A DNA stretch of 64,000 nt. Origin: Mizuhopecten yessoensis (Eukaryota). Made by a program: the position numbers and the translations under genes. Position 1 is the first letter of the stretch. Each line of letters begins with the position of its first letter. The notes under the pieces were generated by a model. It saw nothing but the letters and a program-made list of their open reading frames with translations. It did not search any database and had not been told where the DNA came from. Positions 5,212 to 64,000 of this stretch are shown here, piece after piece. Where the stretch lies: positions 1-64,000 of the forward strand of contig NW_018406841.1 in assembly GCF_002113885.1 (NCBI RefSeq). Direction: 5' to 3'.

Positions 5212-5978
5212 CGGGGCAGAAGTTGTCCAAACCAGTCCGGTCAGTACATGCCGTTGTGTTAACACTTATAATAGATATAGTCTTTTATAATATTCAATAA
5301 CAAAATGGTCAAGCCTGGAAATCAAATTAATGGTGTTCTTTACAAAACTGCAATGACAAAGACTATATCAGTTACAGAATTAAGTGATACCTAATTTACA
5401 CGAAAAAACTGAAGCGAACGACGGACACAAATAAGTCTATCATTCTGGACTATTGCGATCAATTACTCTTACACTCTTTATTCTTTTAGGCAGATCTGTA
5501 TTTTAACATTTTTAAATTGTTATATACTTAATGCTCTTATATAAAGCACACCCACATTTCAGTGTTCAATGGTGTATGTGATCTATTAGCGCAATTATGA
5601 TTGATCTATTGAAGAAATAATGCATTGATGAAGCAATGATAAAGGAAATGTATTTCGTCCTCTGTCCTGTTGTTATTACCAACAAACAATGAGCAAACGA
5701 GAAATAATGTATGACCTAAAACGTTATAATGTTATGATTATCATTCATTATTGAAACCAATAAATAACATCCTAATCGATACTGGGCAAACTTCGTTATA
5801 TACATACTGAATAATGTATATTTCGTCTTAGAACATCGTGGTAGGAAAATCAACGAGAAATATATCCCATGTATTTACCTCCCTATTCCTTGTTCGTGTT
5901 ACCTGTAATATAGGAGTACACAAACACCACCATATACATGTATCCCTGTAAGGTGACTTTCTCCTGTTGATCGATCAT
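5212..5978 (-). pseudogene. Orphan duplicate of gene A exon 1 (5978-5903, MIDQQEKVTLQGYMYMVVFVYSYIT, intact) and exon 2 (5265-5212, acceptor AG mutated to AA)
   Basis: Same 76-nt and 54-nt lengths and clear homology to 3985-4060 and 3258-3311. No exon 3 of its own. Confidence 0.7.
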
Positions 5979-7729
5979 GGCTTCACGTACTCAAGCGGGC
6001 AGAGAATTGTTATGATATTGCTAATTTAACTTCGATATCTTTAATATACAACGGTATCCTAAATATAGCGTTTGTGTATTCAGTTTGGTTGGTTTTATAT
6101 TGTTTCACGTCTTATTAACAACTAAGGTCTTTGAGGAATTCTGACATCAAACGTAAGTATATATAACTCATCTGATCTTTACTTTTCTCAAAGGGCAGAG
6201 AATTGTAATAATTTTCCTGGTAATAATTTAACTTCGATATCTGAAAATTAAGCTGATATGCAATGATGTTGGGAAATAGGAAGTTACCGTATGTAGTTTT
6301 GTATATTAAATATAGCTGTTATGTATTCAGTCAAAAACCGTACCCGCTTTATTTACTCATCAGAGCGGAACAATATACATTATAATGCACTGTTTGTTTC
6401 ATCTGTTACAATACGGAGGAGAAATATTTAAAAAATAGTCACTTGTTCATCTTTGGATTGTCTAGGCGACTTAATTTTCTTTGAATTCCGACATGGTTTC
6501 TGGTTTGGTTTGGTTGATTTTATATTGTTTAACGTCCTATTAACATCTAAGGTCATTTTAGGAATCCCGACATCGTACGTAAGATTACGATATTGCATGA
6601 ATAACCGTAACACCATAATATTGCGTATAACGTTTACCTGTATTTGTATTAAATGTGTATGGTCTGTAATGTAACTTGTATAGGATTACGACTTATAATG
6701 TAGGCTATCTCAGGTCTACACGCTCTCTCGAGCAGCGGACCTGGAACTGAAATGAACCATTGTACGAGACAATCGGTGTAGTGAGGATAACTGTGACGGT
6801 GGAGGTAATCACGTTCAAACAGACTCTTACTGCATATTTCCCACCTCTCACAATGGAAAAAAAAGTGGGCAATAAATCACTTGCTTCCACTGTCCACTGC
6901 ACACATAATCCCCTTTCAAGGCCAATCATGATTACCTGACCATGAAAGGGGATGTGCCCAGTGGACTGTGGTCACAAATGCTGTAAGAAAGGGGAGATAA
7001 TCAATCAGTAAGTAACGATGAAGTCAATACAGTGGAAAGGATAAACTTAGTTGACACATTTAAAATAAGAAAAGAGAAAAAAGCTAAAAATGGTAATTTC
7101 ATGATTGAAAAACAAACAAAAACAAACACATGAGAGGATAAGCATTTCCTGGAAAAGTTTAGAATCTTTAGGAGCTGTTCCTTTATACAAAATTGCACAT
7201 TCAAATATACCATTAATTGAAAGAACTGGAATTCCTTGAAGATTGTTTAACCCTTGCATTGTATGTATGAAAATTGTTTCAAAATCCTGTACCTTTACCA
7301 CATCTTGAAAATTAAACTGAAAATGTAGTCAGAAATTCAACATTGTTTTCCGTATTTTGTTCTAATTGTTGAACAGACACTCCTTACCTTCCCTGACACT
7401 GGAGCTGGATAAAGTAATGCAAAACACTTGTATCCATTATGAAGGATACACTCAAACTGGGCTATTGAGAATAAAGATAATCTTACCTGGTTGTGATTAG
7501 TACTCACTCACACAGGTAGATGTAAATTATCTGCAGTGTAGGGTAGGTAAAAAGATTGTCCAGGTAAACATGTTTTACTCATTTTTTCTGTTTTGTTCGA
7601 GTTGGGAAGCAGGCAGTATGCCAGTTATTGCATGATTTCTCGTCACTCGGGACTTATTACACCATCGCTTCGCTCGGATGTAATAAATCCCTTGTTACTC
7701 GAACACCATGCAATAACCTTTACTTGTTG

Positions 7730-8451: not shown

Positions 8452-9890
8452 ACGGTGGAGGCTGCGGCGAGGGTGACGTGCACGGTTTGTCGTCAGGTAC
8501 GCCGGGTACGTCAGGAAGTGTAAAACGACTGTTATGTGCCTTTACACCAGCGCGAGATATTACGAGTGGCTACATAACAAATCGTATTCCACTCTTAATG
8601 GCCATGTAATTTGACATTTATTCATGTATGTGCTGTTTAATAAATGTATCGGAATCGCAGTTCTTGTTAGGATTTGTCAAACAATATAGAATATCAGCGC
8701 AAAGATGAAGACAACAACGGGATAGAAAGAGAAACATAAACCGTTCCACATGCATTATGTTTGGAGCTAGCTGCGTCACAACAATAGTTCCAGAAACGTT
8801 TCAATGAGAACCATTCAAATGAACCAACAATGATTTAGGTTTCTTTTCATCAATCAATGTTTTAATGATTATCATAACAACATGAATAATGATTTTTTTT
8901 ATACTAAAACCATTCAACAGATTGACGTTTACGAAAATAGTAATGACGTCACATATATGGCAAAACGGCGCGTGCACTGTCAAAGTAAAGGTCATCACAA
9001 TACAGATCGAAGTCGGAACTTTTTACTAGTTTACACCGACTGTCATTTCCTATAACATGGACGCGTTTCTTCCTAGGTTTGTTGATGGATATTAACTTTG
9101 ATGTTTCCGCCTGTCACTGAACCAGATAATATACTGTGGAGTCCGCCATGAAACTGGAACACTGATGACGTTGACCGGTTACACGAGGTCACAATTGATT
9201 ATGTGTGTGTCGGAGAAGTTAAGGTGGAATTTGAACATGCAGTTGTTGTATGTGTTTAACTCTAACACTCGTGTTCGTTTATTAATTTTATTCTTTCACA
9301 ATGCCTATGCCACAGCCATCAATCTATGTCTATTGTTTGTGTGCTATATTGTTTTTATTGAACGGCGATATTGCACGGAAATAGCCTGTGTTATATAATA
9401 TGTATTATAAGAAATAGCATTTTCATGTCTCGGTTTTTTGTCAATGCTAGTTTAACTAGATCAGAGTTCAAACGCTTCTGTTGTAATGTCTGTTGAGATG
9501 TTCCGACCTGTCAGTTCCTTTGGTCCTCTTGGCACTCGAGGTAATTCACCAACACTGTACAATTGGGCGTCGTATTTTCATATTTATCGTATGTTATATT
9601 TTATTCCAGATGTATTTTGGAATACTGAGAGGGTCAACCAGCATTTTTATCAGTGGTATTTGTTTTATCATGTTTTCAAAGCAGCTTTCGCCCAAAACAT
9701 TTTCAGCAATGGTTTCTTAATTGCACTGGTTGAAATATCCCCCTATGAAAAAGATGGAACTTGGACTATGTTCATTGGTAGTTTGTTTTCTTTCTATAAA
9801 ATGTTTAAGGTTTAAAATGTTTATATCTCTTTTCCTATGTCTGCTGTAGCAATGGCAAGCAACTACTAACTGATCACGAAGCTATCATGT

Positions 9891-12800
9891 TCAAGTACTC
9901 ATCGCCGTATTGACGTAGGTTTGTCGCGTGGACATTTCCTCGTACGTATTTGGGGGTTCAACACGTGACTGGTCAAGACTGTCATAGTGGACAGTGTCTT
10001 GTGAGGTCATGACATGGGATCCAGATTTCAGTTCATTCACCATCGTAAGACGCCTGCAAATATAGTTTCCGATGAAGTAGAATATCGGTGATGAAATATA
10101 ACTGTCATCTTCACTGGTTTACAATATACTATCAAATTAATGTCAGACATAATGATTGTTTTCAAAAGGATTTTCTAGTTCACAAACTCTATATTGTAAA
10201 GGACAAAATATAAGCTTTGGCATTTTTGATATTTATATTACAACTACCAGAACTATGCTATTTATTATTTGACTGAATAAATATATAATCCGCCTACATG
10301 TAAACAATGTCTTTCACTAGTGATGCACTAGTCTTTGTTCACCTCTACCTACCGTTTGTTCACCTCTACCTACCGTTTGTACAGAATCACATTAGCGACC
10401 GTGGCCACCGCTACCACCAGTAAGGTCACCACTATGGGGACAACGACACCGACTGAAAGGGATAACGAAGAATTAATGAGTTACGATTTAATCATAAATA
10501 TAACAGAATCGTCGATCAAGACGACCGGAGTTACATTCCCTGTTAAAGCAAGATATTATATTGAATAGTAGCTCATTTCACCTAGTTCCTTGTTCCTTCG
10601 GCCATTTATAAAGTTTTTAAAATAAATGACCTTCACCTATTTTCAAGGTCATGGGGGTCAAATATGTTAAAAACCTTTATACAACTTCTTCTTAATAACT
10701 AAGAGGCCTAGGGTTATGCTATTTGGCAACATGCTGGGATGAAGGGCTACCAAGTTTGTTAAATTTAATATGTGGTCGTTACACTTAGTTTCTTGTCTCA
10801 TGTCTAAACGAGCCAAACACACATTTACTTCCTGCCATCCGATACTTTAGTTTTTCTTGTTTTGTTTGTTTGTGTTTTACATCTTATCAATATAGCTATG
10901 GCAATTTGATGACGTGCCAGGGTTTGGTGGTGGAGGAAAGCCGGAGTACCCGGAGAAAAACCAACGACATGCGGCCATTTATAAATTTGGTTTGTTATTG
11001 GTATCAATTAATCATTTAATCAAAAAGACGTCAAAGAACACTCAATTTATGCTGGGAAAATTAGTTCAAAATATAGAAACACGTGAACGATGATATAAGT
11101 TATCTTCCTATTCACAATGCAAATAATATTAACTTATTTTTTTACTGAATAATTGATGATTTCTCTGTAAATCTCAACAACAAACATCATGTTTTATTGA
11201 TTAAAAAAAACTTCTCGAATTAAACTGTGTTTTAATTCTAATTTGGTTTTATAAAATATAATATAAAATATTTCATGACGTATATACTTACATAAGCGAT
11301 ATACTTGGTTCAAATCAGCCGTGACAGAGAAACGGGAACTGCTATTAAGACCACAAAAAGCCTTGCTTTTTAAAATATTAAAATGAAACAGAAACCCATT
11401 GGTTCCCCTTTGAATTTACAACATAATTTTTACAACGTATGTCGCATTGCATTAAATATCTGTGCTCGTCAAAATAAAGCAAAAAAACATGCCAAGTGCC
11501 AAGAAATATGTTTCATATTCAAACTTCTATTGTTTGTTAACATAGATATTTATCGTACACGGCGTTAATCACTGTTTCACCCGTTTCTATTTCTAATCAT
11601 TGTCTTGAGGATAGTAAGTATGCATTTTAGAAAGGTTATAAATCTTAATCAGTTAGTGTTTGTGTGTGACGTTTCTGTGTGACCAGTGAAGACAGCAAAA
11701 GTAGTAAATATATACGAGTTGCCACTATTCACCTGGATATTAAATTTATATCTGTTCTTGGTCATGGTACAAATATAAGCATATCAAAAATCCATTACAA
11801 TTGTGTCCATATGTCGCACAACATTTGTTTTCAAGCGTCATTTAACAAACAACAAACAATTATATTGGTACTGTACGTAGGGAAAACAAGAGATTTACTG
11901 TTCTTCTTTATTCGTGGAATTTAGTTTTAAGATATCTAACTTTATAAACAAGTAACACAAGACACATTCACGACAAACTAATGAAGGTTGTTTTCATCTG
12001 AATACGAATTTATGTTTTGTCATTTTGATTTTAACATTTAAACATTACTTCTAATGATATTACTGTTATTTCTGAACCGCATATTCTAAGTTATGGATTA
12101 TGATATGAACATTTTTTGTATTTCTTTTTGATTTACATGGGAAATAGGCAAAAACAAAATTATATCGGGATAGCTAAATATGTTCCCATATACATACCCA
12201 ACGGGATAGTAGGTTGGTCACATTTACAACATCCCGATTTGACGTCAACAGGGGTTGTTGTCATCGTTGTTGGTGGCGTCGTCATCGTTGTTGATGTCGT
12301 TGTTGTTGTTGTTGTTGTTGTTGTCATTACTGCTTCAGGAGTAGATGATGCAAGTAATGTATCTGGTGAATCACACGTAACCCTTAAGTTCACACCTGTG
12401 ACAAGATACCAATCCAAATACCAAATATATTTTGTTATACATTACAACCGTTTATTTTAATGAAATTTCGTCATAATTTATGCCATTAATTTGTAGATCT
12501 GACGTTTATTGATAAATAAGCCGTGTGGAGAGGACGTCAAATTAGCTTTTAACGTTGTTACTCTTTCAATTAAGATGTGTATCAATGTACTTGCAGTTTG
12601 AATGTGCAATATATATATTAATATTTTTTTTAGGAAAAATGAACACAAATGTTATTCTGAAACATTAACATCTGGTATTATTCTGGCCTTTGTGTAATTA
12701 AGAAGGCAATGTTTGTCAGAAAATGCAACATAAAAAAAACAAAGAAATATAAATTTACAGTTATTTTAATGTGTTATTATTTATCATACCCAAAAGTCGT

Positions 12801-15636
12801 ACAAACGTTTAAACGTTTCTAAAACATGTTTTTTAAGAACGTATATAAACGTGTATTTTAACTAATTTGATTTTTTGAAATCGTACCTACTAGTGGTTTA
12901 TATGCAACGCACATTGATGATTGATTCTACATTTTGTTAAATAATATTCTAAGAGGATTGATATTATTTCTTTTGATAATGATATGTTGTAAATAGGTGC
13001 ACAACTGTCGAAAAGCTAACATTATGATACATGCTACTAAGACACCTGTCAGCTTTAAATAGTTTGTTGACTGTTAGCAAGATTTTTAAATAGATATTTA
13101 TTATCGTAAATTTCCTAGCGTTGATGATGCTCAGACGAATCTGAATTATTAGATAATTGAATTTATTGTTTGTTGGAGGAGTTAAACAGGCGATAAGGTG
13201 TTTGTAAAACGTATTTCATGCAAATACAGAGTGAATGTAAATCTGTTTATAAGTAAGCCGTTATGTTACCTGATTTAATGAGTATGCAGTACCCGGACTG
13301 CAACTGGGTGTTGTTATTGACTTTCGACAAAGTTATATTTAACAGTTCATTGTTGGCAAAATTGCTAATGATATCACCACTAAGCCGTGTACATTGATAT
13401 TCAGTATAAGTATTAGTAGGATGTCTGTTAAATCTAAGGATGCTTCCACAATCAGACGCCGGCGCTGTTCCAGGATAAGGTCCAGTTTGTAAGTTGACAG
13501 GACCTGTATTAGTCCCACTTAGACTAACTGTACACCGACAACTGTCGTAGTCTAACACTCCTGTGTCGTTCGTATCTACCACCACACGTCCAGCTGTCAG
13601 TGATCCACTCCTACACATCGGCAACACTGTAAGATCAAATTCATTAAATCAAGTAAATGTTTAAACAGATGATGTTCGGTGAGAGCCTAAAGTATCGATA
13701 TCTTTCTACCTCTACCCAAACATAAAGTCTAGAATGAGAAGTTATCATTGTCCCACTCCTACATATCGATTCATTAGTGTTGTGTTGATTTATTGTTATT
13801 TTGTAATGTCAATCTCTTGTTTTCATTTTTCTTTTCAATTGAAGCAAATTACTTCAAGATCAGAAACAATAATCTTACTATATCAACTATATACCATGTC
13901 AATGTCAATTGCCTAATACTGTTATTAACTAGAATTGTAAAGCTTTTGAAGTTGAATCTCCAATCTGTTTTAAAGATGAAAATTTCTGACAACATTTATA
14001 CAATATGGGTCGAATTTTGCGCACTATGAGGAAATCAGATTTTTCCTTTTTTTTAAGATTTACTCTTTAAATACATCTAAATATTCTGATTCAATTTATA
14101 AATCTATCGTTACCTTCTTTTGCATATTTCAACAAAAATATTAATTTATTTGTACGTACATAGAATACTACAACATCCGCTATACATACCGTTAGTAAAT
14201 CCATCTGAATTAGCTTTATCAGCACATATGGTAGCATCGATGCCTGCAATCAATATCTATCATTACTAACAATCACAATGTCCATTGTGTCCTGCTTTTT
14301 TCAAACAGAATAATGATTAAGAAAATAGAAAAGTGAGCATTAGATATAGTCACATCCTCGATACTTCAGAGGTTATACTCACACCAATTTTACTGTTATG
14401 CGATCGACAGAAACTTTTGATGTACATCTATAGATCAGACAAGTCTTCTTGTATAATCCACAAGGTGATGCACACTTAGCCTTCGATTTTGCTACGACAT
14501 ATTCTAGAAGTGTAGAGAGCGAAAGTGAGCGAAACCCCTGGACATCGAGGATATCATAGCCATTTATGCATATAGAAAGTCAAAATGCATATCAAACTGT
14601 AAGTACATCGCAAATCCTTAACACTTTTATATTTTTATCTTTTGGCACCGACACATGACTGTCCTAGGCTAAACTAAACCTTAGCGTGTGATTGATTAAA
14701 ATATTTAAACGTTTTGAAAAGATTCATGTAGCACAACCAATAAGTGTTTATATGCGTCGTTTCGATGACTAGTATGGTATGTACTCTATCACCTCCATCA
14801 GACAAATGACCAGCGAAGTGTATGTACATAAAGGTGTAAGATTGTACGCGTTGTCCCCGCAAATCGATGTCGATTCTGCTACGCTGTAAGCGTATGTACA
14901 ATAAGTTGTTATATATGTACCGAAATGACTCGTGTCACATAAAAACACTTATTGTCTATGCTACAATAATCTTTTTATAATCCATACTTAAACCAACTTG
15001 AAGAAAATACTTAGAAAAATGCTAAAACGTGCATCTTATCACATATTTCAAATGGATGTGATGCACAATACATGACATGGTTACACTCTGTTCTAGTACT
15101 TCTTCAACTTCTGTTTTATTCTGTTCATCTCAAACCTATCAATACATTTTGTAGTATCCCCATTACATCAGCAAATATATAATATCAAACTACACAGACT
15201 TGAAGGTGCTTATGTGCGAATGTTTCCCACTTTAAAGCGAAAAGGATGCCTACATGCATATAGTCTAAATGTTTGTACAGATTTAACCCCAAAATTATAA
15301 AGAAAAAAGCCAAACCGAGAAAAACTTACAAAGTATATATGAAACATAGCAACTTATATGACTGCTATATCGATAATCTGACAGAGACTGATACGAGTAT
15401 AGCCTGCAGAATAATGATATTTAATGCCAGCTGTTGTATCCCAACACCTTTTTCGTAGACACCAGTTAAAGTTACTTTACCTATACTGCTATCAAGCTAA
15501 ATAAACACAGCAAATACATTTTTACGGAGTGATCACCTTAACAAGAATTTACTTCCGCATTGGGTTTACCTGTGATGATATAGTCCACCAGTATTACAAA
15601 AGCCATATATCTCATCCGGTTGATTCTGCCCCTCAT
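9891..15636 (-). CDS. Gene B (complete, 305 aa): type I membrane receptor with Cys-rich domain, poly-Thr stalk, TM and Tyr-motif tail. Exons 15636-15570, 14243-14190, 13626-13270, 12395-12198, 10452-10374, 10053-9891
   Basis: All six exons have canonical GT/AG and join into one 918-nt open frame. Signal MRGRINRMRYMAFVILVDYIIT; TM VGVVVPIVVTLLVVAVATVANVILY followed by KRR; tail RLTMVNELKSGSHVMTSQDTVHYDSLDQSRVEPPNTYEEMSTRQTYVNTAMST*. Confidence 0.88.
10860..10978 (-). mobile_element. SINE 3' fragment with V-like core
   Basis: ggaggaaagccggagtacccggagaaaaacc preceded by a (tttg)n tail. Confidence 0.55.
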
Positions 15637-37029: not shown

Positions 37030-38534
37030 TCTGTCGACCATACACAACATGAACAGTGAAACCTCGATTAAATGCCACTCATTTCATTTGCCACCTCGTT
37101 TACTGCAAACATATTTCACATTTCCCTCAATCTATTGTCAAGCCCTTTTATAATGCCAAAACCTCTCTGGAATAATGGTGGCATTATAACGAGTTTTTGC
37201 TGTACATTAACTGACTAAATCTGTAATACACGAAAGAAGTTAGGGCTGACTAGGAATCAAAGTAACAATAATGTACAAACATGTACAAGTTTATATATAT
37301 TCTAAATACATTTTTGAAACAAATTACAATAAAGTCACAAATTGTTTGTAAAACTTTTCAGCAAACACACATTGCCAATTTAAATATTTATATTCATTCT
37401 AAAATTTCGTAATGAGTAACAAGCATTATCCATGCAATCCAATCAACAATGTTGAACTATTTTCATTGTTTCATTGTATTACTACGCTTCCTTTTACGTT
37501 ATCTGACACGCCATGTCTGTCCCTATGTAGAAATATTCGTTAAGTAACGTTATTCATAATCAATGTATGCATCATTTACAATAATTGATTCCACCTTTCG
37601 ATTAAACATTATTATTTTTACGTATTTCTTAGAAGAAAATGTTGTCCGATGTTATTTCATAAAGCAATACACTACTTACTTAAGAGATTCAAATACTTAC
37701 TATGAACATGATATATCCCCAAAACAGTCGTCTCATTTTTGTGATCTGATGAAACATTGTGCAGAAGTAATACACAAAACTTCACTTAGACCATTCATAT
37801 CCTATATATATATAAACCATGGTATAAAACAGAAACCACCATGGAATTTCGTTTGTCGGATGAAAGGATTTGGGGTGAACTTCTGGTGTACAGAATATGA
37901 ATATGTGGTATTTATGATTCCATCGCTGTATTGACGTACATCTGTCGAGTAGAGGTGTCGGCGTACAGGTTGGGAGGTTCCACCCGGGAGAGATCTAGAC
38001 TGTCATAATGGACAGGGTTTGGTGACGTCATGACGGCTTCAGTATACTCTGGCTGTTTCACGAGTGCAAGTCTTCTGCAAATATGATTGTCAAGCTTATT
38101 ACGGTTGTTGATATCGTTAAGTTTTACCTTGGTGGGCAAAAAGTCATTTACAGGCAAAATATATAGCACAAAAGTAAATAGATCAATTCTAAATGGTGCT
38201 ATGAAGGATAGCCTGTTAACGTCAAAGGAAATATGTGATAAGTAACATAATTCTGTACCATGTTACTTACTTTCTATAAAGGATAAAATGGACTACCATG
38301 GTTACAGTAATCAGTAGTGAGGTTACTACTAGAGGGACGACTACAGCACCTGGAAAATATACATATTGTTGTTATCTGTAACACAAATATTGGCTAAATT
38401 TGTTGCATAAAAAGTATACCACCTGAACTATGAGTTAGATCGACATGTTCAATCATTGTCCACAATAAGGAATCTCATTTATTTAACAAGTAACATAAAA
38501 AAAATATTTTAACTTTTATTAGCCAATTTTGTTT

Positions 38535-56410: not shown

Positions 56411-59400
56411 TTATGATTCCATCGCTGTATTGACGAACATCTGTCCAGTAGAGGTGTCGGCGTACAGGTTGGGAGGTTCCACCCGGGAGAGATCTAGACT
56501 GTCATAATGGACAGGGTTTGGTGACGTCATGACGGCTTCAGTATACTCTGGCTGTTTCACGAGTGCAAGTCTTCTGCAAATATGATTTTCAAGCTTATTC
56601 CGGTTCTTGATATCGTAATGTTTTACCTCGGTGGGTAAAAAGTCTTCAAAAGGCAATGTAAATATCAAAATGTATATAGGAATTTGATCTCAAATCAGTT
56701 CAAATACAGAACTTGATAATGAAAATGATACGAAATTATTTAATTATTTTCGTCAATGTGTAGTTAATTTCAAAACAGATACCATTGAGAAAAAGTGTCA
56801 TAAATAGATCAAGTATCCATTCTAAATGGTGCTATGAAGGATAGCCTGTTAACGTCAAAGGAAATATGTGATAAGTAACATAATTCTGTACCATGCTACT
56901 TACTTTCTATAAAGGATAACATGGACTACCACGGTTACAGTAACCAGTAGTGAGGTAACTACTAGAGGGACGACTACAGCACCTGGAAAATATACATATT
57001 GTTGTTATCTGTAACACAAATATTGGCCAAATCTGTTGTATAAAAAGAATACCACCTGAACTATGAGTTAAATCGACATGTTTAATCATTGTCTACAAAA
57101 AAATGTTTTTTGTTTATTTAAAAAGTAACATGAAAGAAGTTATTTTGACTTGTATTGGCCACTTTTGTTTGCCCGCACATTAGCGCACCAGGTTCTTAAT
57201 GTAAACGGAAACCGGAGTACAAGGAGAAAACCCACGTGTTTGGGCAGGTGACCCCATACCTTTTCACGTCTGATCAGGGAATCTAACGCGGACCCTCTTT
57301 TCGACGGCTACTGATATTATTTATTAGAATATCATAAACCATACATAATGTTATATTTCTCGCCTAAAGCTGTTAATTTTCTCGCATCACAGACGAGAGA
57401 ATTATCCAAGTATTTGTTTGCAGAGAACAATATATAAAGAGACACAATGTGTTACAACGGAAAAAGCAGATTAATATTTCCCTGCTGTATCTCCAAGAGA
57501 ATAGAAGGCATATATATATAAACAAACCTCTAATTATATAGTGTCAAAAGTCCACTTGAAAAAATANCTTGGGGCCTGATGGTTAGATGTTTAGGTGGCA
57601 GAAGTTTCAAAAGTTTTATGTGTGGCTTGAGAAATATATATAGATGTGAAATGTATAAAAGAAAAAAAAATTAAGTCTGTTTTTGACTGGGGGAGTTTAT
57701 TAAGTGTGTAATTTGTTGTAAATGTTGGTCAATTTTTGGTGTCGAATTCAATACAAAATGGCGGCCCCCATATAAAAAAAGTTCAAATAGGTAGATTTTT
57801 AAAACTTCTTTTTTTACAGGTGTGTGAAATGACATTCTTCAAAATGATGTCAGGTGAACCAGTGTGGATAACTCCATTTAACCAGGACAGTGGTAAACGT
57901 TAACACTATCGTCTATGGAAAATCATTTGGTTCCGCGGTCCCTACACCCATCTTTAAAGCCCAAAAACAAAAGATTCAAATATCCCTACCTCCCTACCGT
58001 GACGTAACCCATATCTCGATGACAGAGCCACAGAGTGATCTCCCTTCCTCTTCCTTTTATGACGCCTGCTGCCTGCTGACGGCCTGGAGCTTGCACCATA
58101 TCAAAACTTTGTTTTGTCGGTTTGGTTTGAGTGTCAACTCAATTTATTGCGCAGAGTGTGTGCTTTATATCCATATGCCCTTATTACTATAATCATTTGT
58201 TGTTGAAAATTATTTTTGTGCCTTTTACGGCCGGTTATTTTACTCGACGTGTGCCGGTGGTGTGCCACGCGGTCCGCCATTATTGTGTGAAATTTTCCGA
58301 CCTCTGTTTATTTCAGTGACGGTTGTTTGTTTCGGCAAACGTTATTTATTTTAATCGTTTTCTGATTTATATTACGGGTGAAATTCTTTCTACGTTGCGT
58401 ACCTTGTACTATCGTATTTTATTATTTTTTCTCGTGTTTATCTGCTTGTAAACTTTGTTTGACGACAGACTTTCTTTCGGGATTGTCTGTGTCTACCAGG
58501 ATTAGTGACGCGCAGCTCACTAATCCCGGCATCAATACTGGTCAAGCTAACCTTCCCGGTCAGTTACCCGGACCCGGTCCTATTAGGTCCGGCCCGGAGT
58601 TTCATTCGACCGGGAACCTTGGGGGTTCCCCCCAGGTGTTGGGTTTGCTGGACATGGGGCCGGGTTCCGGCCTCCGTTTTCCCCTGGCTTAGGGTATACG
58701 GGTGCCTGCGGGCAACCATCCTTGGGCCACCCTAACCAGCCTGCGGATGGTTATGGGTTGCGGCAGCATCCCGGCAGTTATGGGCTTAGCCCGTACATGT
58801 CCGGCTTTCCACCTGGAGGGAGTGGCGGTCCATCTTCGCCCTTTGGGCAAGATGGCCAGCCCCAGTCTCAAGCAGGCCAGTTTGGCCAGTTCTGGGGTCA
58901 CTCCCAACCCGCGGGACCTTTCCCTTATCCTCCGGGATATGGGTTTAGCCCCATGGCTTTTCAGTCATGGAATCCTTGGGGTTTGGTTTCTCCCTCACGG
59001 AGACGTGTTAGCAGTTTTGTTGAACCCCCCCCCCCCCCCCCCAAATGGTCTGCTACTTCGGGGGCCTTATCGGCCGGTCCTAAGAAGGTGTGTCGGACCT
59101 TCAGGACTTCTGCCTCTCAGGCAGACTGGTTGGTCTCTGGGTCCAAGGGTAGGGTTTTGGCTACTAAGATTAAACCTACAGCCACGGTCGTTAGGCGCAC
59201 TGCACCTAAACGCCGTTATGGGAAGCCTTCTCTCTGGCTGGCCCATTTCCTCCGCCCGAGGCTTTTGGTCTGGCTGGTGTGGAGGCTATGGCAGAGGACG
59301 ATGATGTTGTTCATTTTTCTCCTGGTTGCTCGGATATAGACACTGGTCTTTCCGAGTCGTCTGTTGACGGTCCTCAGGAGGGCTTGCCCTCTGAGGAGGA

Positions 59401-62400
59401 TGTCCAGGATGAGGGTGACCCTGAGGATGCTGAGGTTTAGGCCCAGCATGTGTTGTCCGGTATGCGGGGCCTTAGGGCCGACGTTTCCCGGATTGGGGAG
59501 GAGGTTTGCCCACCACCTTCGGCGTCATCTGTCCCCGAGTCCACCACCCTATTGGGTTCTTAGGTGGCTCCTTGGGTGTCCGCTCGGTCGGACCGCTCTC
59601 TGCCAGAAGGCATTATTGTGTCTTCATCTCTGGCCACCGCTCAGTCTCGGGTTTTAGAGAAGAATTCTTCTTCAACCCGTAGTCCTGGGTATGCTGGGTT
59701 GCAGCTCAGTGTTGGCGATTTGTCGGAGGTGCACGCCACTGACTATGCCACACATGATGGCCTGCTTGATCCTCAACCAGCTAAGCTGAAATCGAGGGAA
59801 CTTGCAGCCTGGCCCGGTAAATCGGTGGACCAAGTGGTGTTCTGTCCCAAAGAACACCACAAAATGGAGATGCGTCTCTCCATCCAGATGCTGTCTTATA
59901 TAGACTACCTGACGGTTTGTCTATATAGGGTATCCGACTTGCCTGAGGGTCGGCCAACATCCAGGACAGAGTGGCCTCTGCCCTGAACGGGGCATTGAGA
60001 GCGCTGGCAGCTTTACAGGTGTCATCGCTCGTCAATGTCTTGTTGGCTAGGCGGTTTTCAGTTTTGAAAAAACGTCCAGTCGATGAGCCTTACCGCTCCA
60101 GATTGTTGACTGCCCCCTTCTCAGGGTCCACTCTTTTGGAAGGGGCCTTCCTTCTGTTCAGAAGGATTTGAAGGAGGACTCGGTCGCCTCTGCACTTCTG
60201 GTGAAGAGGATTCAGGCTGAGAAGGCCAGTACCTCGCAGGGGTCAGCGCCTCCTAAGAAGAAGGCTAAACCTTCGGCTTCGCAGTCCTCTGCGCAGCCCA
60301 AGTATAAGCCTCCCTTCAAGGGCAACAAATGGAAGGGTAAGAAGGGTAAGAACCCTCCTGGGGGTAAGAAGAAGGGTTCCTGACTCTCTTCTTCCCTCCT
60401 TGGTCGTGTCAGACGACGAGTTTGGCCGGGAGGACTGCAGTCCTCTCGGCTCAAGCTTAGGTCCTTCTCCCGCAGGATTAGACTTCGGGTCAGCAGACGG
60501 TTCTCTTGCCTGGCAAGGTCTCGATCTGCCTCGACCAGATCTTCCTGTGGGGGGTCGTATTTCCGCTTTCCTTCCAGAGTGGAAGGAAATTACGAAGATG
60601 CATGGGCCTTGTCTGTGGTCAAGGAGGGGTTAGGGGTTAGGCATCCGCTAGTGCGGTATCCGCGTCAGAGCCAATCTTTTTTCCTCCACCGGGGGATCCG
60701 GAAAAGGCTTTGGCTTTCCAGGAGAAAGTAAGGACCATGCTTACCAAGGGCGCGGTCGAGGAGGTTCCTATGTCGGTATGCACTCCCGGGTTCTACTCCA
60801 GAATGTTTCTGGTTCGGAAGAAGTCCGGGTCGTGGCGTCCCATCATAGATCTAAGTGCCTTCAACAAGCACGTAGATTCTCCTCACTTCAAGATGGAGAC
60901 TCCTCGGGGTATTATCGCCTCCGTGAGAGAGGGAATGTGGGCGACTTCAGTAGATCTAAAGGACGCCTACTGCCACTTCCCCATCAAAAACTCGGCACGG
61001 AAGTACCTCCGTTTTACTTGCAACGGAAAGGTCTTCCATTTCCGGGCCATGCCGTTCGGGCTCACAACTGCACCTTTGGTTTTCACTAAGCTGCTGCAGG
61101 TGGTCGTGGGATTCCTGCACTCTCGAGGAATAGATGTTCACATCTATTTCGACGACTCCCTCATGCTCCACCTAGTGAGAGAGTCTCCGGTTCAGGTCAC
61201 CCGGTTGGTTCTGAAACTCTTACTCAAGGTCGGCTTCATTCCTTCCAGAGAAAAGTCGGAGGTTTCCCCATCTCAGGATTTTGTTTTCCTGGGGAACCGT
61301 TTCAATACGGTTCAGGGCATCGCCCTTCCACCGATGGAGAAGTTCGAGAAGGCAAGGGCTTTTGCTCTGACCTGCATCGGCCGGTCTCAAGTCCAGGTAC
61401 GTTGGTTTCTCAGTTTTCTCAACGCCCTGGCCGATGTGGTCCCCTTAGGGAGACTTCACATCAGGCCTCTCCAGATGTTTCTCCTTGTCAACTGGGTCCC
61501 TTCTTCAAGGGATTGGGAAGCCTGGGTTCCTCTGAACAAGTCGGTCAAGAAGTTCGCACGCTGGTGGACTCATCAGGACAATGTGCTCCGAGGGGTTCCT
61601 TTGTCCAAGCCGGTTCCCACTATGACCCTGTACACGGAAATGCAGTTGACAATTTGCGTCAAGCATCTACCAGGCAGGTTGAATGTTCTGGCGGATACTC
61701 TTTCCAGACGCCGCCAGCCGGTGTTGACAGAGTGGCAACTGAATCCCTCGATTTTCGAGGGAATTTATCAGGTGTGTGACAGGCCTCACATAGACCTGTT
61801 CGCCACTTCACTGAACAATCAGTTGCCAACGTTTGTCTCTCCGGTTCCAGATCCAAGGGCTTGGGCCGTGGACGCTCTGTCTCTGGATTGGGAGGGAATG
61901 CATGCATATGCATTCCCGCCCTTCAACCTGGTGGGCAGGGTGCTGCAGAAGTTTCGGGGGCATCAGTGTTCACTCCTCCTGATAGCGCCCCTGTTGCCGA
62001 GGCAGCCTTGGTTTCCGGAGCTTTTGTCACTTCTGGTGGAAGAGCCCCTGGCTCTTCCTTCCAGAGCGAACCTCCTTCGCCAGCCTCGGTCCAGGCAATG
62101 CACTCTCGTCCGGAGATCCTCCACCGTCACGCTTGGAAGCTATCTCAGGAGGCCTCGCTCAGGCGGGCTTTTCTAGGGACGTGTCAGATCGCATCGCTCG
62201 ATCAATTAGGTCTTCCTCATCTGCCGTCTACCAGTCCCGATGGAAGATATACTGTGATTGGTGTGTCGGCAGGAAGGTTGATCCATCAAGGCTACTGTCC
62301 AGGTGATTGCGGACTTCCTTCTTTGGCTGTTTAGGGACCGCTGTCTTGCCCCTGGCACTATCGCTGGTTATCGCACGGCCATTGCTAGTGTTCATTCTGT

Positions 62401-63857
62401 TCATGGTAGGTCGGAGGTAGGCTCGTCCTCCTCTCCTTCTGCCTTGATTAGGGGGTTTGGGTTGGACAGGCCTAGGTGCTCGAATCGTTGATGCGAGCAC
62501 CTTATGATCCTTTAGCGTCTGCCTCCTCGCCCAATCCTATTAAGATTCCGTCTTTGACTGCCTTCGTTGGGTCTGAGGAACGGGATAGGTTGCTCTGTTC
62601 CTGTCGGCCGCTTATGTTTTACCTCGATAAAACCGGGGGGGGGGGGGGGGGCGTTTCCTAGATCTCGTCTGTTTTTGCCCATTAGGCTGGGTCAGCAGAA
62701 TATCTCCTCTAAGTCAGTGTCTAGATGGATCTGTCGGGTCATCAAGTACGGTTACGACCACTCGGGTGATCAGGTTCGGGCGTTGTATAAGGTGAGAGCT
62801 CATGAGATCAGGGCTCTTGATGCGTCATGGGCCCTCCTCAATGGGCCCCCCTTTCAGGAGGTCATGTCCGCGGCTTTCTGGCGCGGACAGACTACCTTCA
62901 CGGATTTTTATCTCCGGTCCTTGGCTTCTCATTCTGATGGATTGTATTCCCTTGGGCCGGTGGTGGTTGCACAGTCTGTGGCTGTTCCTCCACAGTAATT
63001 CAGTGATTTTAAACAGTATGCTATCAGGCACCACGATGGTACACCTGCTCGATTCACGGGGAGGTTTTCCATTTATTTATTTTTTCAATTACTTTCGGGG
63101 CTTATTTAGGGGGGTTCCTTGAACCTTTTCCCTACCTTGAGCATGTCTCTAGTTTGTTCCGTCAGCCTGGTCTGCCTGGATTCGTAGCCTCCACTACGGT
63201 AAGACGAATTCGCATACTAAAGTTATGGTAATTATTACTGAAATTAAATTGAGGTTTTAGAAGTAAAACCAAATTTCATGATGTAATACCTACCATAACT
63301 TTATTGAGTCCATCCCTGTATTCCTCCCCTTGCCTCCTCATCCCGGCTGCCTTTAGGCTCCATAAAAGGGGAAGGGAGATCACTCCGTGGCTCTGTCATC
63401 GAGATATGGGTTACCTCACGGTAGGGAGGTAGGGATATTTGAATATTTTGTTTTTGGGCTACAAAGATGGGTGTAGGTATTGTATATGCATACTAAAGTT
63501 ATGGTAAGTATTACATCATGAAAATTGGTTTTACTTCAAAAACCTCAAGTTTATTTAATAGCTATGAATTGAAATACATACTTAATGGATAACATTGCTG
63601 TAAATCGTTTTGTTGAGCGCACTTTTGTCCTAATGTTGTCGATCCAGAATTAGTGCTGTTGTATGTGGTTGCATCCCTTGACTGAGTGGTTGTCATCCTT
63701 GACTGGGTGGTTATCTCTCTTGACTGAGTGATTGTCTCCCTTGACGGCGTGGCTGTCTCTTTAGACTGAGTGGCTGTTGTCCTAGATTGACTGGCAGTCG
63801 TTGTCTCCCTTGGACTGGAAATTGAGACACATTTTGTGGACAACGAAGACCCCGGAC
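56411..63857 (-). CDS. Gene F (5'-partial): close paralog of gene D. Stalk exon 63857-63582, TM exon 56982-56904, tail exon 56573-56411; a DIRS element lies in the intron
   Basis: Exon lengths 276/79/163 are identical to gene D, frames are open and splice sites canonical. Upstream exons lie beyond the window. Confidence 0.8.
57170..57295 (-). mobile_element. Degenerate SINE copy in gene F intron (shared with gene D)
   Basis: ggaaaccggagtacaaggagaaaacccacgtg...ggcaggtgacccc. Confidence 0.65.
58505..60383 (+). pseudogene. DIRS ORF1 (gag-like), fragmented by frameshifts; Pro/Gly/Gln-rich N-part and Lys-rich C-terminus
   Basis: Overlapping broken ORFs upstream of RT, ending in KYKPPFKGNKWKGKKGK. 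Assigned by position, not by motif. Confidence 0.55.
60710..62176 (+). CDS. DIRS ORF2: reverse transcriptase + truncated RNase H + Dam-like DNA adenine methyltransferase domain
   Basis: RT motifs FYSRMFLVRKK, WRPIIDL, DLKDAY, MPFGLTTAP, YFDD. RNase H tail HLPGRLNVLADTLSR, with the N-terminal DAS/GWG part apparently deleted after LYTE. Methyltransferase motifs IDLFAT..N..LP.F and YAFPPF. Confidence 0.92.
   Translation: MAFQEKVRTMLTKGAVEEVPMSVCTPGFYSRMFLVRKKSGSWRPIIDLSAFNKHVDSPHFKMETPRGIIASVREGMWATSVDLKDAYCHFPIKNSARKYLRFTCNGKVFHFRAMPFGLTTAPLVFTKLLQVVVGFLHSRGIDVHIYFDDSLMLHLVRESPVQVTRLVLKLLLKVGFIPSREKSEVSPSQDFVFLGNRFNTVQGIALPPMEKFEKARAFALTCIGRSQVQVRWFLSFLNALADVVPLGRLHIRPLQMFLLVNWVPSSRDWEAWVPLNKSVKKFARWWTHQDNVLRGVPLSKPVPTMTLYTEMQLTICVKHLPGRLNVLADTLSRRRQPVLTEWQLNPSIFEGIYQVCDRPHIDLFATSLNNQLPTFVSPVPDPRAWAVDALSLDWEGMHAYAFPPFNLVGRVLQKFRGHQCSLLLIAPLLPRQPWFPELLSLLVEEPLALPSRANLLRQPRSRQCTLVRRSSTVTLGSYLRRPRSGGLF
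62200..62998 (+). pseudogene. DIRS ORF3 tyrosine recombinase remnants (internally deleted, frameshifted)
   Basis: N-terminal ADFLLWLF..LAPGTIAGYRTAI and the C-terminal catalytic region RAHEIRA...AAFWRGQTTFTDFYLR (HxxR, W, Y). Confidence 0.85.
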
Positions 63858-64000
63858 CTACCATTTGAAATAGAAATATGTGTTAGCAAGCCTTTATAAA
63901 AGGTAAAAGACTAGGAAGTACGTTATGTAGCTTAAAGGTCTGGTTTCGATATTGCAACACTCCAAATATAAACTTTCGCAAATGATGGGGATGACCTTGT

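What the first reader, a model, noticed from the sequence alone, without database searches (positions are those of the whole stretch)
9891..10053. Gene B tail packs ITIM, ITAM-like, YxxM and YxN motifs into 54 aa (missed by the ORF track)
VHYDSL is a canonical ITIM (V-x-Y-x-x-L). YDSL-x10-YEEM has ITAM-like spacing. YEEM fits the PI3K p85 consensus YxxM and YVNT fits the Grb2 consensus YxN. The motif consensuses are established; their use here is inferred.
Basis: partly seen in the sequence, partly recalled or inferred. Interest (0 to 1): 0.72.

Follow-up and report, generated by a model that had tools for sequence, protein, structure and literature searches.

The report
Scallop receptor tail, three conserved tyrosines
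The stretch is the real last exon of an unstudied Yesso scallop surface-receptor gene, and it encodes a floppy intracellular tail whose three tyrosine motifs are kept across four scallop genera, so they probably serve as signalling docking sites, though nobody has tested this.

Summary
Window 10053-9891 (minus strand) is the sixth and last coding exon of Mizuhopecten yessoensis LOC110452986 (XP_021357449.1, 305 aa). It follows a TM exon in frame, and spliced contigs of one public run show the join.

The protein has a signal peptide, one CUB-like beta-sandwich, a Thr-rich stalk, a TM helix and a 55-aa disordered tail. The tail holds VHYDSL, YEEM and YVNT.

- **Conservation:** Across 16 tails from Mizuhopecten, Pecten, Argopecten and Ylistrum, all three tyrosines and the flanks V(-2), D/S/[LI]/D, E-P-P and N(+2) are kept. 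The tail is as conserved as the folded head or more so. Tail dN/dS is 0.13-0.23.
- **ITIM-type and YxN readings:** both hold up.
- **YxxM:** lineage-specific. It occupies this tyrosine in 3 of 16 tails, and the Pecten and Argopecten relatives have YVNM at the third tyrosine instead.
- **ITAM:** not met in gene B (10-residue gap, Met at +3). Only the relaxed form is met, by the YEEI-bearing relatives.

The most likely function is a phosphotyrosine docking cassette of a scallop receptor family that swaps heads and tails. Binding, phosphorylation and the sign of signalling are untested. The scan has noted several other scallop receptor families with tyrosine tails. I rate this a new variant of a known kind, of moderate interest.

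The parts
9891..10053 (-). Last coding exon (163 nt): 54 codons plus stop. It encodes the cytoplasmic tail with VHYDSL, YEEM and YVNT. The 3'UTR continues unspliced below 9891.
   Evidence: Translation and splice phase. X1 contig joins 10374|10053 and runs on past 9750. Identical to the C-terminus of P0034/P0003.
10374..10452 (-). TM exon (79 nt): (V)GVVVPIVVTLLVVAVATVANVILYK(R). There is no charged residue in the helix, and KRR follows on the cytoplasmic side.
   Evidence: Joints 10452|12198 and 10374|10053 in X1. AF2 helix 226-262.
11292..11341 (-). Alternative 50-nt cassette exon. When included it reads A-VPVSLSRLI-stop, giving a product without TM and tail (a soluble form or an NMD target).
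   Evidence: X1 joints 10452|11292 and 11341|12198 at depths 10 and 7.6, against 5.65 for the skipping joint. Translation.
12198..12395 (-). Stalk exon (198 nt): a Thr/Pro-rich mucin-like stalk ending in the membrane-proximal CCKC motif.
   Evidence: AF2 pLDDT below 50 for residues 174-223.
13270..13626 (-). Ectodomain exon (357 nt): a Cys-containing CUB-like beta-sandwich.
   Evidence: AF2 pLDDT above 90. VIA-align top matches are CUB domains at Z 7-8.3. No Pfam hit.
14190..14243 (-). Exon 2 (54 nt): the end of the signal peptide and the N-terminal linker (IDATICADKANSDGFTN).
   Evidence: X1 joints 13626|14190 and 14243|15570. Frame. Matches P0034.
15570..15636 (-). Coding part of exon 1: ATG at 15636-15634, reading MRGRINRMRYMAFVILVDYIIT (start of the signal peptide).
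   Evidence: The six exons sum to 918 nt, which is 305 codons plus stop and equals XP_021357449.1.

Best explanation
The stretch is the terminal exon of a type I membrane receptor of the Yesso scallop (LOC110452986). The receptor has a signal peptide, one CUB-like domain, a mucin-like stalk, a TM helix and a 55-residue intrinsically disordered cytoplasmic tail.

The tail is a conserved three-tyrosine cassette: V-x-Y-D-[ST]-[LI]-D, then R-x-E-P-P-x-x-Y-[EA]-[ED]-x, then Y-x-N-[TMS].

The following is inferred, not shown:
- Ligand-driven clustering lets a Src-family kinase phosphorylate these tyrosines, which then recruit SH2 proteins.
- The third site (pYxN) fits a Grb2/Drk-type adaptor best.
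- The first site fits the ITIM class (SHP/SHIP-type phosphatases) or a single Syk/Shark SH2.
- The second site reads YEE[M/I] in the gene-B lineage, close to the Src-family SH2 optimum pYEEI and to the p85 YxxM class. It reads YADT in most paralogs, so its partner is lineage-specific.

The TM helix has no charged residue. Signalling would therefore go through the receptor's own tail and not through a DAP12-like adaptor.

The TM-plus-tail cassette is a module that has been exchanged between genes with very different heads. Gene B's own head also exists, 84% identical, on a long tail of another type.
For: **Gene structure and expression.** Exon phases fit. Spliced contigs in run X1 join all exons except ecto-stalk at GT..AG introns. 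The public model is identical.

**Topology and disorder.** The AF2 model shows a signal helix, a beta-sandwich at pLDDT above 90 and a TM helix at 226-262. The tail at 263-305 has pLDDT below 50.

**Conservation.**
- Across 16 tails from Mizuhopecten, Pecten maximus, Argopecten irradians and Ylistrum balloti, Y23, D27, E32, Y37 and N48 are invariant. V21, D24, S25, R30, P33 and Y46 are kept in at least 88%.
- All three Tyr are among the 8 best-kept of 53 columns.
- Tail identity is as high as or higher than head identity. The Argopecten ortholog has tail 69% against head 62%. Pecten XP_033731474 has 75% against 33%. The C76349 paralog has 82% against 38%.
- dN/dS of the tail exon is 0.13-0.23 for pairs with dS of 0.26-0.40.

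**Against a sorting-only role.** The +3 position of Y2 is Thr in 10/16 tails, and Y3 keeps N at +2, so YxxPhi cannot explain those two sites.

**Partners exist.** The genome has at least 43 SH2-domain exon matches and a p85 inter-SH2 gene.

**Precedent.** ITIM signalling through SHIP2 has been reported for an oyster receptor (PMC11841013).
Against: - There is no direct evidence of phosphorylation or of any SH2 partner.
- The motif classes are short and permissive. Each occurs in 11-20% of shuffled tails.
- D at +1 of the first site is not the residue preferred by SHP2 SH2 domains (my knowledge of published SH2 specificities).
- YxxM is not conserved at the second site.
- Three true RNA-seq runs of this species show almost no reads on the gene, so the expressing tissue or condition is unknown.
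- The one run with spliced contigs is only guessed to be RNA.
- About half of its spliced contigs include a cassette exon that removes the TM and tail.
Confidence: 0.6

Rival explanations
1. The first two tyrosines form an ITAM-like bidentate site (YDSL-x10-YEE[M/I]) that recruits a tandem-SH2 kinase of the Syk/Shark type. Gene B would then be the activating, directly signalling partner of a paired receptor, as CEACAM3 or Draper are.
For: - The Y1-Y2 distance is 14 residues in 15 of 16 tails.
- The Pecten and Argopecten relatives read YDSL-x10-YEEI, which meets the relaxed ITAM form YxxI/L-x6-12-YxxI/L used for Draper (PMC6219719).
- CEACAM3 has a working ITAM-like site whose second half is YxxM (PMC1887732).
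- A twin with an 84% identical head carries a long tail ending in two canonical ITIMs.
Against: - Gene B itself has Met at +3, and a gap of 10 lies outside the canonical 6-8.
- In 10 of 16 tails the second site is YADT or YTET, which no ITAM definition accepts.
- The inter-tyrosine segment (D-x-x-R-x-E-P-P) is itself conserved, which suggests it is more than a spacer.
- The first site also fits the ITIM consensus, so the sign of signalling cannot be read from sequence.
Confidence: 0.15
2. The tyrosine motifs are trafficking signals and not phosphotyrosine docking sites. YDSL and YEEM would be YxxPhi signals read by AP-2 or other adaptor complexes for endocytosis or sorting of the receptor.
For: YDS[LI] keeps a bulky aliphatic residue at +3 in 16 of 16 tails. 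It lies about 25 residues from the membrane, a workable distance for YxxPhi (the YxxPhi consensus is established knowledge). In gene B, YEEM also fits YxxPhi.
Against: - Y2 has Thr at +3 in 10/16 tails.
- Y3 has T, S or M at +3 with an invariant N at +2, and neither pattern is a known sorting signal.
- YxxPhi appears in 52% of shuffled tails, so the match carries little information.
- The conserved V at -2 and D at +4 of Y1 are not required by AP-2.
Confidence: 0.15
3. The motif matches are chance features of a fast-evolving tail and have no specific function.
For: Each single motif class is found in 11-20% of shuffles of the same residues. The family is lineage-restricted and rapidly diversifying.
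Against: The tyrosines and their flanks are conserved across four genera, while the heads drop to about 30% identity. Tail dN/dS is 0.13-0.23. All three motifs together occur in 0.24% of shuffles.
Confidence: 0.05

Closest known systems
CEACAM3 (human granulocyte phagocytic receptor) and the CEACAM1/CEACAM3 paired receptors
   Same: A single-pass receptor that signals through its own short tail. [quoted passage not shown] A near-identical head exists on a second, ITIM-bearing tail (PMC5112662 for the CEACAM pair; here).
   Different: CEACAM3 has an Ig head and a 7-residue gap. Gene B has a CUB-like head, a 10-residue gap and an added conserved YxN site, and its first site also fits ITIM. There is no sequence homology.
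Draper/CED-1 (Drosophila engulfment receptor)
   Same: An invertebrate receptor with an ITAM of relaxed spacing (YxxI/L-x6-12-YxxI/L). It is phosphorylated by Src42A and bound by the Syk-like kinase Shark, and further functional non-ITAM tyrosines lie in the same tail (PMC6219719).
   Different: Draper has EGF/EMI repeats, a much longer tail and an NPxY site. Gene B lacks NPxY, and its own second site ends in Met. Only its Pecten and Argopecten relatives meet the relaxed ITAM form.
DAP10 (YINM) and CD28 (YMNM) type YxNM sites
   Same: One phosphotyrosine serves both p85 (YxxM) and Grb2 (YxN) (PMC3192283). The Pecten and Argopecten relatives of gene B read YVNM at the third site.
   Different: Gene B itself has YVNT at that site (YxN only) and carries its Met at the second tyrosine (YEEM). 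DAP10 is a head-less adaptor paired to a receptor through a charged TM residue. Gene B has its own head and no charged TM residue.
CDCP1 (CUB domain-containing protein 1)
   Same: A type I membrane glycoprotein with a CUB-type ectodomain and a short tail. Src-family kinases phosphorylate its tyrosines, which then recruit partners including SHP2 (PMC4395315).
   Different: CDCP1 has three CUB-like domains and unrelated tail motifs (Y734, Y743, Y762), and it is a vertebrate protein. The scallop head matches no CUB sequence profile. No homology is claimed.
Oyster ITIM receptor CgNCAM1
   Same: A bivalve haemocyte receptor whose ITIM-bearing tail was reported to act through SHIP2 (PMC11841013). 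This shows that ITIM-type signalling operates in bivalves.
   Different: It has an Ig/FN3 head and two ITIMs, with no YxN or YEE[M/I] site. It belongs to an unrelated family.

Membership tests
ITIM ([S/I/V/L]-x-Y-x-x-[I/V/L] in a cytoplasmic tail) | Sequence consensus present | tested here: met
   VHYDSL in gene B. V at -2 in 14/16 tails (A in 2), and L/I at +3 in 16/16.
ITIM ([S/I/V/L]-x-Y-x-x-[I/V/L] in a cytoplasmic tail) | Located in the cytoplasmic part of a membrane receptor | tested here: met
   N-terminal signal peptide, a single TM helix at 226-262 and KRR after the helix. The topology is inferred, not measured.
ITIM ([S/I/V/L]-x-Y-x-x-[I/V/L] in a cytoplasmic tail) | Phosphorylation-dependent recruitment of SHP-1/2 or SHIP and an inhibitory output | not testable with these tools
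   Needs biochemistry. SH2 genes are present in the genome.
ITAM (canonical YxxL/I-x6-8-YxxL/I) | Two YxxL/I half-sites 6-8 residues apart | tested here: not met
   The gap is 10 and the second half-site is YEEM.
ITAM (relaxed YxxI/L-x6-12-YxxI/L, as used for Draper, PMC6219719) | Two YxxL/I half-sites 6-12 residues apart | tested here: not met
   Gene B fails because +3 is Met. P0009 (Pecten) and P0047 (Argopecten) meet it with YDSL-x10-YEEI. Ten of 16 tails read YADT or YTET at the second site.
p85 PI3K docking site (YxxM) | Y-x-x-M present and conserved | tested here: inconclusive
   YEEM is present in gene B. M at +3 of Y2 occurs in only 3/16 tails. The Pecten and Argopecten relatives have YVNM at Y3 instead, and most paralogs have no YxxM. 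A p85 gene is present.
Grb2-type docking site (YxN) | Y-x-N present and conserved | tested here: met
   YVN in gene B. N is invariant in 16/16 tails and Tyr is kept in 15/16 (Phe in gene F). The site is duplicated in three paralogs.
CUB domain (ectodomain) | Match to the Pfam CUB profile | tested here: not met
   No Pfam family at E up to 1 for five head exons. UniRef's automatic name is 'CUB domain-containing protein'.
CUB domain (ectodomain) | CUB beta-sandwich fold | tested here: inconclusive
   The AF2 head has pLDDT above 90. The VIA-align top rows are CUB domains: Kremen 5fws Z 8.3 (rmsd 2.9, 106 aligned), spermadhesin 1spp Z 8.2, then MASP, neuropilin, TSG-6 and cubilin. By the tool's own note, Z near 8 is the typical best score for models without a clear match.
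Paired receptors (same head, different signalling tails) | Near-identical ectodomains on unrelated cytoplasmic tails | tested here: met
   P0049 (contig C875) has a head 84% identical to gene B over 135 aa and a 200-aa tail of the other type, with LMYAEV and VIYSEV. Pecten has P0007 and P0050 as the same two forms.
Paired receptors (same head, different signalling tails) | Opposite signalling outputs, with the activating member using a charged TM residue and an ITAM adaptor | tested here: not met
   There is no charged residue in the TM helix. Both tail types contain ITIM-consensus sites. The outputs are not testable here.

The most novel reading that the evidence does not exclude
The short three-tyrosine tail of gene B and the long multi-YAxV/ITIM tail of its 84%-identical twin would form an old paired-receptor system (shared by Mizuhopecten, Pecten, Argopecten and Ylistrum) built on a CUB-like head. 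The short tail would be the directly activating arm, using an ITAM-like site plus Grb2 and PI3K sites as CEACAM3 and DAP10 do. The long tail would be the inhibitory arm. That would be a convergent, non-Ig invention of paired immune receptors in a mollusc, kept diverse by exchange of the TM-tail cassette between heads.
Probability: 0.25. Interest if true: 0.7.

Novelty: new variant of a known kind. Interest (0 to 1): 0.45.

Why it matters
Tyrosine-motif tails are how vertebrate immune receptors switch cells on and off. Few invertebrate receptors with such tails have been tied to a partner.

This scallop family offers a compact case for study. It has a 55-residue tail with three conserved sites, natural variants that serve as ready-made controls (Y-to-F in gene F, YEEM/YEEI/YADT at site 2, YVNT/YVNM at site 3), and a twin with the same head on another tail.

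If the sites bind SH2 proteins, the family would show that paired, modular receptor design arose outside the Ig superfamily in molluscs. That would matter for bivalve immunity and aquaculture disease work.

As it stands, this is a well-supported annotation and a testable hypothesis, not a demonstrated mechanism.

Tried and rejected
- **Pfam scan.** A scan of five head exons, the stalk and the tail gave nothing useful.
- **Foldseek.** The search with the full-length model returned only low-TM picornavirus capsid rows, because the disordered parts spoil the global alignment. I replaced it with VIA-align, which leaves low-pLDDT stretches out.
- **Word-based protein search.** Restricted to the tail (P0003 residues 240-295), it found only the gene itself and one paralog. 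It missed P0047 and P0009, which share long words with the query, so its blank says nothing. The same tool with a full-length alignment was swamped by Thr-rich words, scoring 8000 candidates for 11 hits.
- **RNA-seq.** True RNA-seq raw reads (X22-X24) gave almost no coverage of the gene, so the tissue and level of expression remain open.
- **hemITAM.** Rejected, because there is no acidic triplet before YDSL.
- **NPxY and PPxY.** Rejected. E-P-P-N-T-Y puts N at -2 and the prolines at -4 and -3.
- **Class I SH3 site in R-V-E-P-P.** Rejected, because there is no second proline at the required spacing.
- **Locus L026.** A tail-like exon on contig C875 (YESL..YTVL..YINT) has no recognisable head exon upstream and looks like a stranded 3' module. 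I did not pursue it.
- I sent no hand-joined exon sequence to any search tool. The full-length protein used was the public model returned by the search (P0003/P0034). I also did not search the genome for the exon-exon junction to exclude a processed retrocopy.

Full report
**What is at the coordinates**

The window is AT-rich eukaryotic DNA (about 33% G+C, few long ORFs). It is contig C3514 of a 987.6-Mb assembly. Protein look-ups identify the organism as the Yesso scallop, Mizuhopecten yessoensis.

On the minus strand, 10053-9891 reads (R)RLTMVNELKSGSHVMTSQDTVHYDSLDQSRVEPPNTYEEMSTRQTYVNTAMST-stop, preceded by a polypyrimidine tract and AG. The exon upstream (10452-10374) encodes a hydrophobic helix, GVVVPIVVTLLVVAVATVANVILYK. 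It ends with two bases (CG) that the first G of the tail exon completes to Arg.

**Gene model and transcription**

Contigs of public run X1 carry minus-strand GT..AG joints at 10374|10053, 10452|12198, 13626|14190 and 14243|15570. They also carry an alternative pair, 10452|11292 and 11341|12198.

Together with phase arithmetic, this gives six coding exons: 15636-15570, 14243-14190, 13626-13270, 12395-12198, 10452-10374 and 10053-9891. They sum to 918 nt, which is 305 codons plus stop.

A profile search with the head domain returned the public model of this gene (P0003 = OWF48497.1; P0034 = XP_021357449.1, LOC110452986). It is identical to my exon-by-exon reading. I sent no hand-joined sequence to any tool.

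Some caveats apply:
- X1 is only guessed to be RNA and also covers introns at low depth.
- No X1 contig was listed that bridges the ecto-stalk intron.
- Three certain RNA-seq runs show almost no reads on the gene.

The gene is therefore spliced as modelled somewhere, but its tissue and expression level are unknown.

**Architecture**

An AlphaFold2 model built on 19 family members gives the following:
- a signal helix;
- a confident beta-sandwich at residues about 35-170 (pLDDT above 90);
- a disordered Thr-rich stalk at 174-223;
- a TM helix at 226-262;
- a disordered tail at 263-305 (pLDDT below 50).

An exhaustive structural comparison puts CUB domains at the top: Kremen 5fws Z 8.3, spermadhesin 1spp Z 8.2, then MASP, neuropilin, TSG-6, cubilin and C1s. 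No Pfam profile matches. I call the head CUB-like without claiming membership.

The signal peptide, the KRR after the helix and the glycan-type stalk make this a type I protein with a cytoplasmic tail. The helix has no charged residue.

**Is the motif set more than chance?**

Shuffling the tail's own residues gives ITIM in 11% of shuffles, YxxM in 20%, YxN in 16% and all three together in 0.24%. That test is post hoc, so I rely on conservation instead.

The genome holds ten clear paralogous tail exons and one more distant one. The head-based search, which is not circular with respect to the tail, brought in relatives from Pecten maximus, Argopecten irradians and Ylistrum balloti.

Across 16 tails:
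- Y23, D27, E32, Y37 and N48 (tail-exon numbering) are invariant.
- V21, D24, S25, R30, P33 and Y46 are kept in at least 88%.
- The +3 residue of the first site is always L or I.
- The three tyrosines are all among the eight best-kept of 53 columns.

The tail is as conserved as the folded head or more so:

| Relative | Tail identity | Head identity |
|---|---|---|
| Argopecten ortholog P0047 | 69% | 62% |
| Pecten protein P0009 | 75% | 33% |
| Paralog on C76349 | 82% | 38% |

This is unusual for a disordered region. Nei-Gojobori dN/dS of the tail exon is 0.13-0.23 for informative pairs. These numbers rest on few sites, but they agree with one another.

**Motif by motif**

1. **V-x-Y-D-[ST]-[LI]-D.** This meets the ITIM consensus in 14 of 16 tails, and the other two have Ala at -2.
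2. **E-P-P-x-x-Y.** The tyrosine is invariant but its +3 residue is not. It is Met in gene B, its C76349 paralog and one Argopecten protein. It is Ile in the Pecten and Argopecten YEE-type tails, Val in one, Leu in one and Thr in ten. The p85 reading therefore belongs to a sub-lineage at best. In the Pecten and Argopecten relatives the Met sits at the third site instead (YVNM, the DAP10/CD28 type; PMC3192283). This is suggestive but could be coincidence. YEEI is also the textbook optimum for Src-family SH2 domains (my knowledge).
3. **Y-x-N.** The Asn is invariant. The Tyr is lost only in gene F (Phe). The site is duplicated in three paralogs. This is the best-supported specific reading, because pYxN is the most selective SH2 motif class (Grb2).
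4. **ITAM.** Gene B fails both the canonical and the relaxed definition. The YEEI relatives meet only the relaxed definition used for Draper (PMC6219719). CEACAM3 shows that a YxxM second half can work (PMC1887732). The YADT majority cannot be an ITAM.

A pure sorting-signal reading explains only the first site.

**Context: a mosaic family**

The window holds five or six tandem paralogs.

Gene B's 3' part, from the intron below the stalk exon through the TM exon, the intron, the tail exon and the 3'UTR (window 11977-9300), is 75-83% identical in nucleotides to a gene on contig C76349. That gene's head is only 38% identical to gene B's. The TM-tail cassette has therefore moved between heads.

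Conversely, gene B's head exists at 84% identity on contig C875 (P0049), joined to a 200-residue tail of another type that carries three GDVYAxV sites and two canonical ITIMs. Pecten maximus has both forms too (P0007 and P0050).

**Partners and precedent**

The genome has at least 43 SH2 exon matches and a p85 inter-SH2 gene next to an SH2 exon. An oyster ITIM receptor acting through SHIP2 has been published (PMC11841013). No paper in the library names this gene.

**Verdict**

The tail is most likely a phosphotyrosine docking cassette. Its YxN and ITIM-type sites are old and conserved. YEEM is a lineage-specific variant, and the ITAM reading holds only in relaxed form for relatives.

The receptor family has not been described in any paper I could find, but the principle is familiar. 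The scan has already met several other scallop-specific receptors with tyrosine tails. I score interest at 0.45 and classify it as a new variant of a known kind.

Noticed in passing
window 11292-11341 (-): An alternative 50-nt cassette exon lies between the stalk and TM exons. Including it shifts the frame and ends the protein at A-VPVSLSRLI-stop, giving a head-plus-stalk product without TM and tail. In run X1 the inclusion joints (depths 10 and 7.6) are about as deep as the skipping joint (5.65). This could be a secreted decoy form or an NMD switch.
   Followed up: partly
window 10337-10378 (-): The donor site of the TM exon sits in a perfect 21-bp tandem duplication (ACAAACGGTAGGTAGAGGTGA twice), which creates a second GT donor 21 nt downstream. 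Using it would read into a TAG. X1 contigs use the first donor.
   Followed up: partly
window 56414-56572 (-) versus 37915-38073 (-): The tail exons of genes F and D differ by two non-synonymous and no synonymous changes. One of them turns the YxN tyrosine into Phe in gene F (MFVNT against MYVNT), a natural Y-to-F variant.
   Followed up: partly
window 9300-11977 versus L020 (contig C76349) 2492-5010: The whole 3' module of gene B, introns and 3'UTR included, is 75-83% identical in nucleotides to a gene whose head is only 38% identical in protein. This is evidence for exchange of the TM-tail cassette between family members, with the breakpoint in the intron below the stalk exon.
   Followed up: partly
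window about 58000-63300 (+): A G+C-rich block (48-54% against 33% around it) carries long ORFs, including a 488-aa reverse-transcriptase-like ORF at 60710-62176. It looks like a retroelement sitting in the long intron between gene F's stalk exon (63562-63864) and TM exon (56906-56977). It was only observed, not analysed.
   Followed up: no
L026 (contig C875:510000-519999), + strand 5414-7414: Five tandem TM-like exon copies are followed by a divergent tail exon (ATYESL..MYTVL..VYINT-stop). No recognisable head exon lies upstream. It sits head-to-head with the gene for P0049 and may be a stranded or decaying 3' module.
   Followed up: partly
P0034 residues 213-225 and the same place in relatives: A membrane-proximal Cys cluster just outside the TM helix (GCCKCDQP in gene B, GRCRCDEP in Pecten, CTCGESD in Argopecten) is kept across the family. 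It could make disulfide-linked dimers, which would matter for any bidentate SH2 binding.
   Followed up: no
P0023, P0026, P0030 (oyster Saccostrea cucullata for P0023): Weak but significant matches of the head profile (E 4.5e-6 to 2.8e-4) occur in oyster proteins with very long mucin stalks and different tails ending in KYAVVNK-type sites. The head domain is therefore not strictly scallop-only.
   Followed up: no
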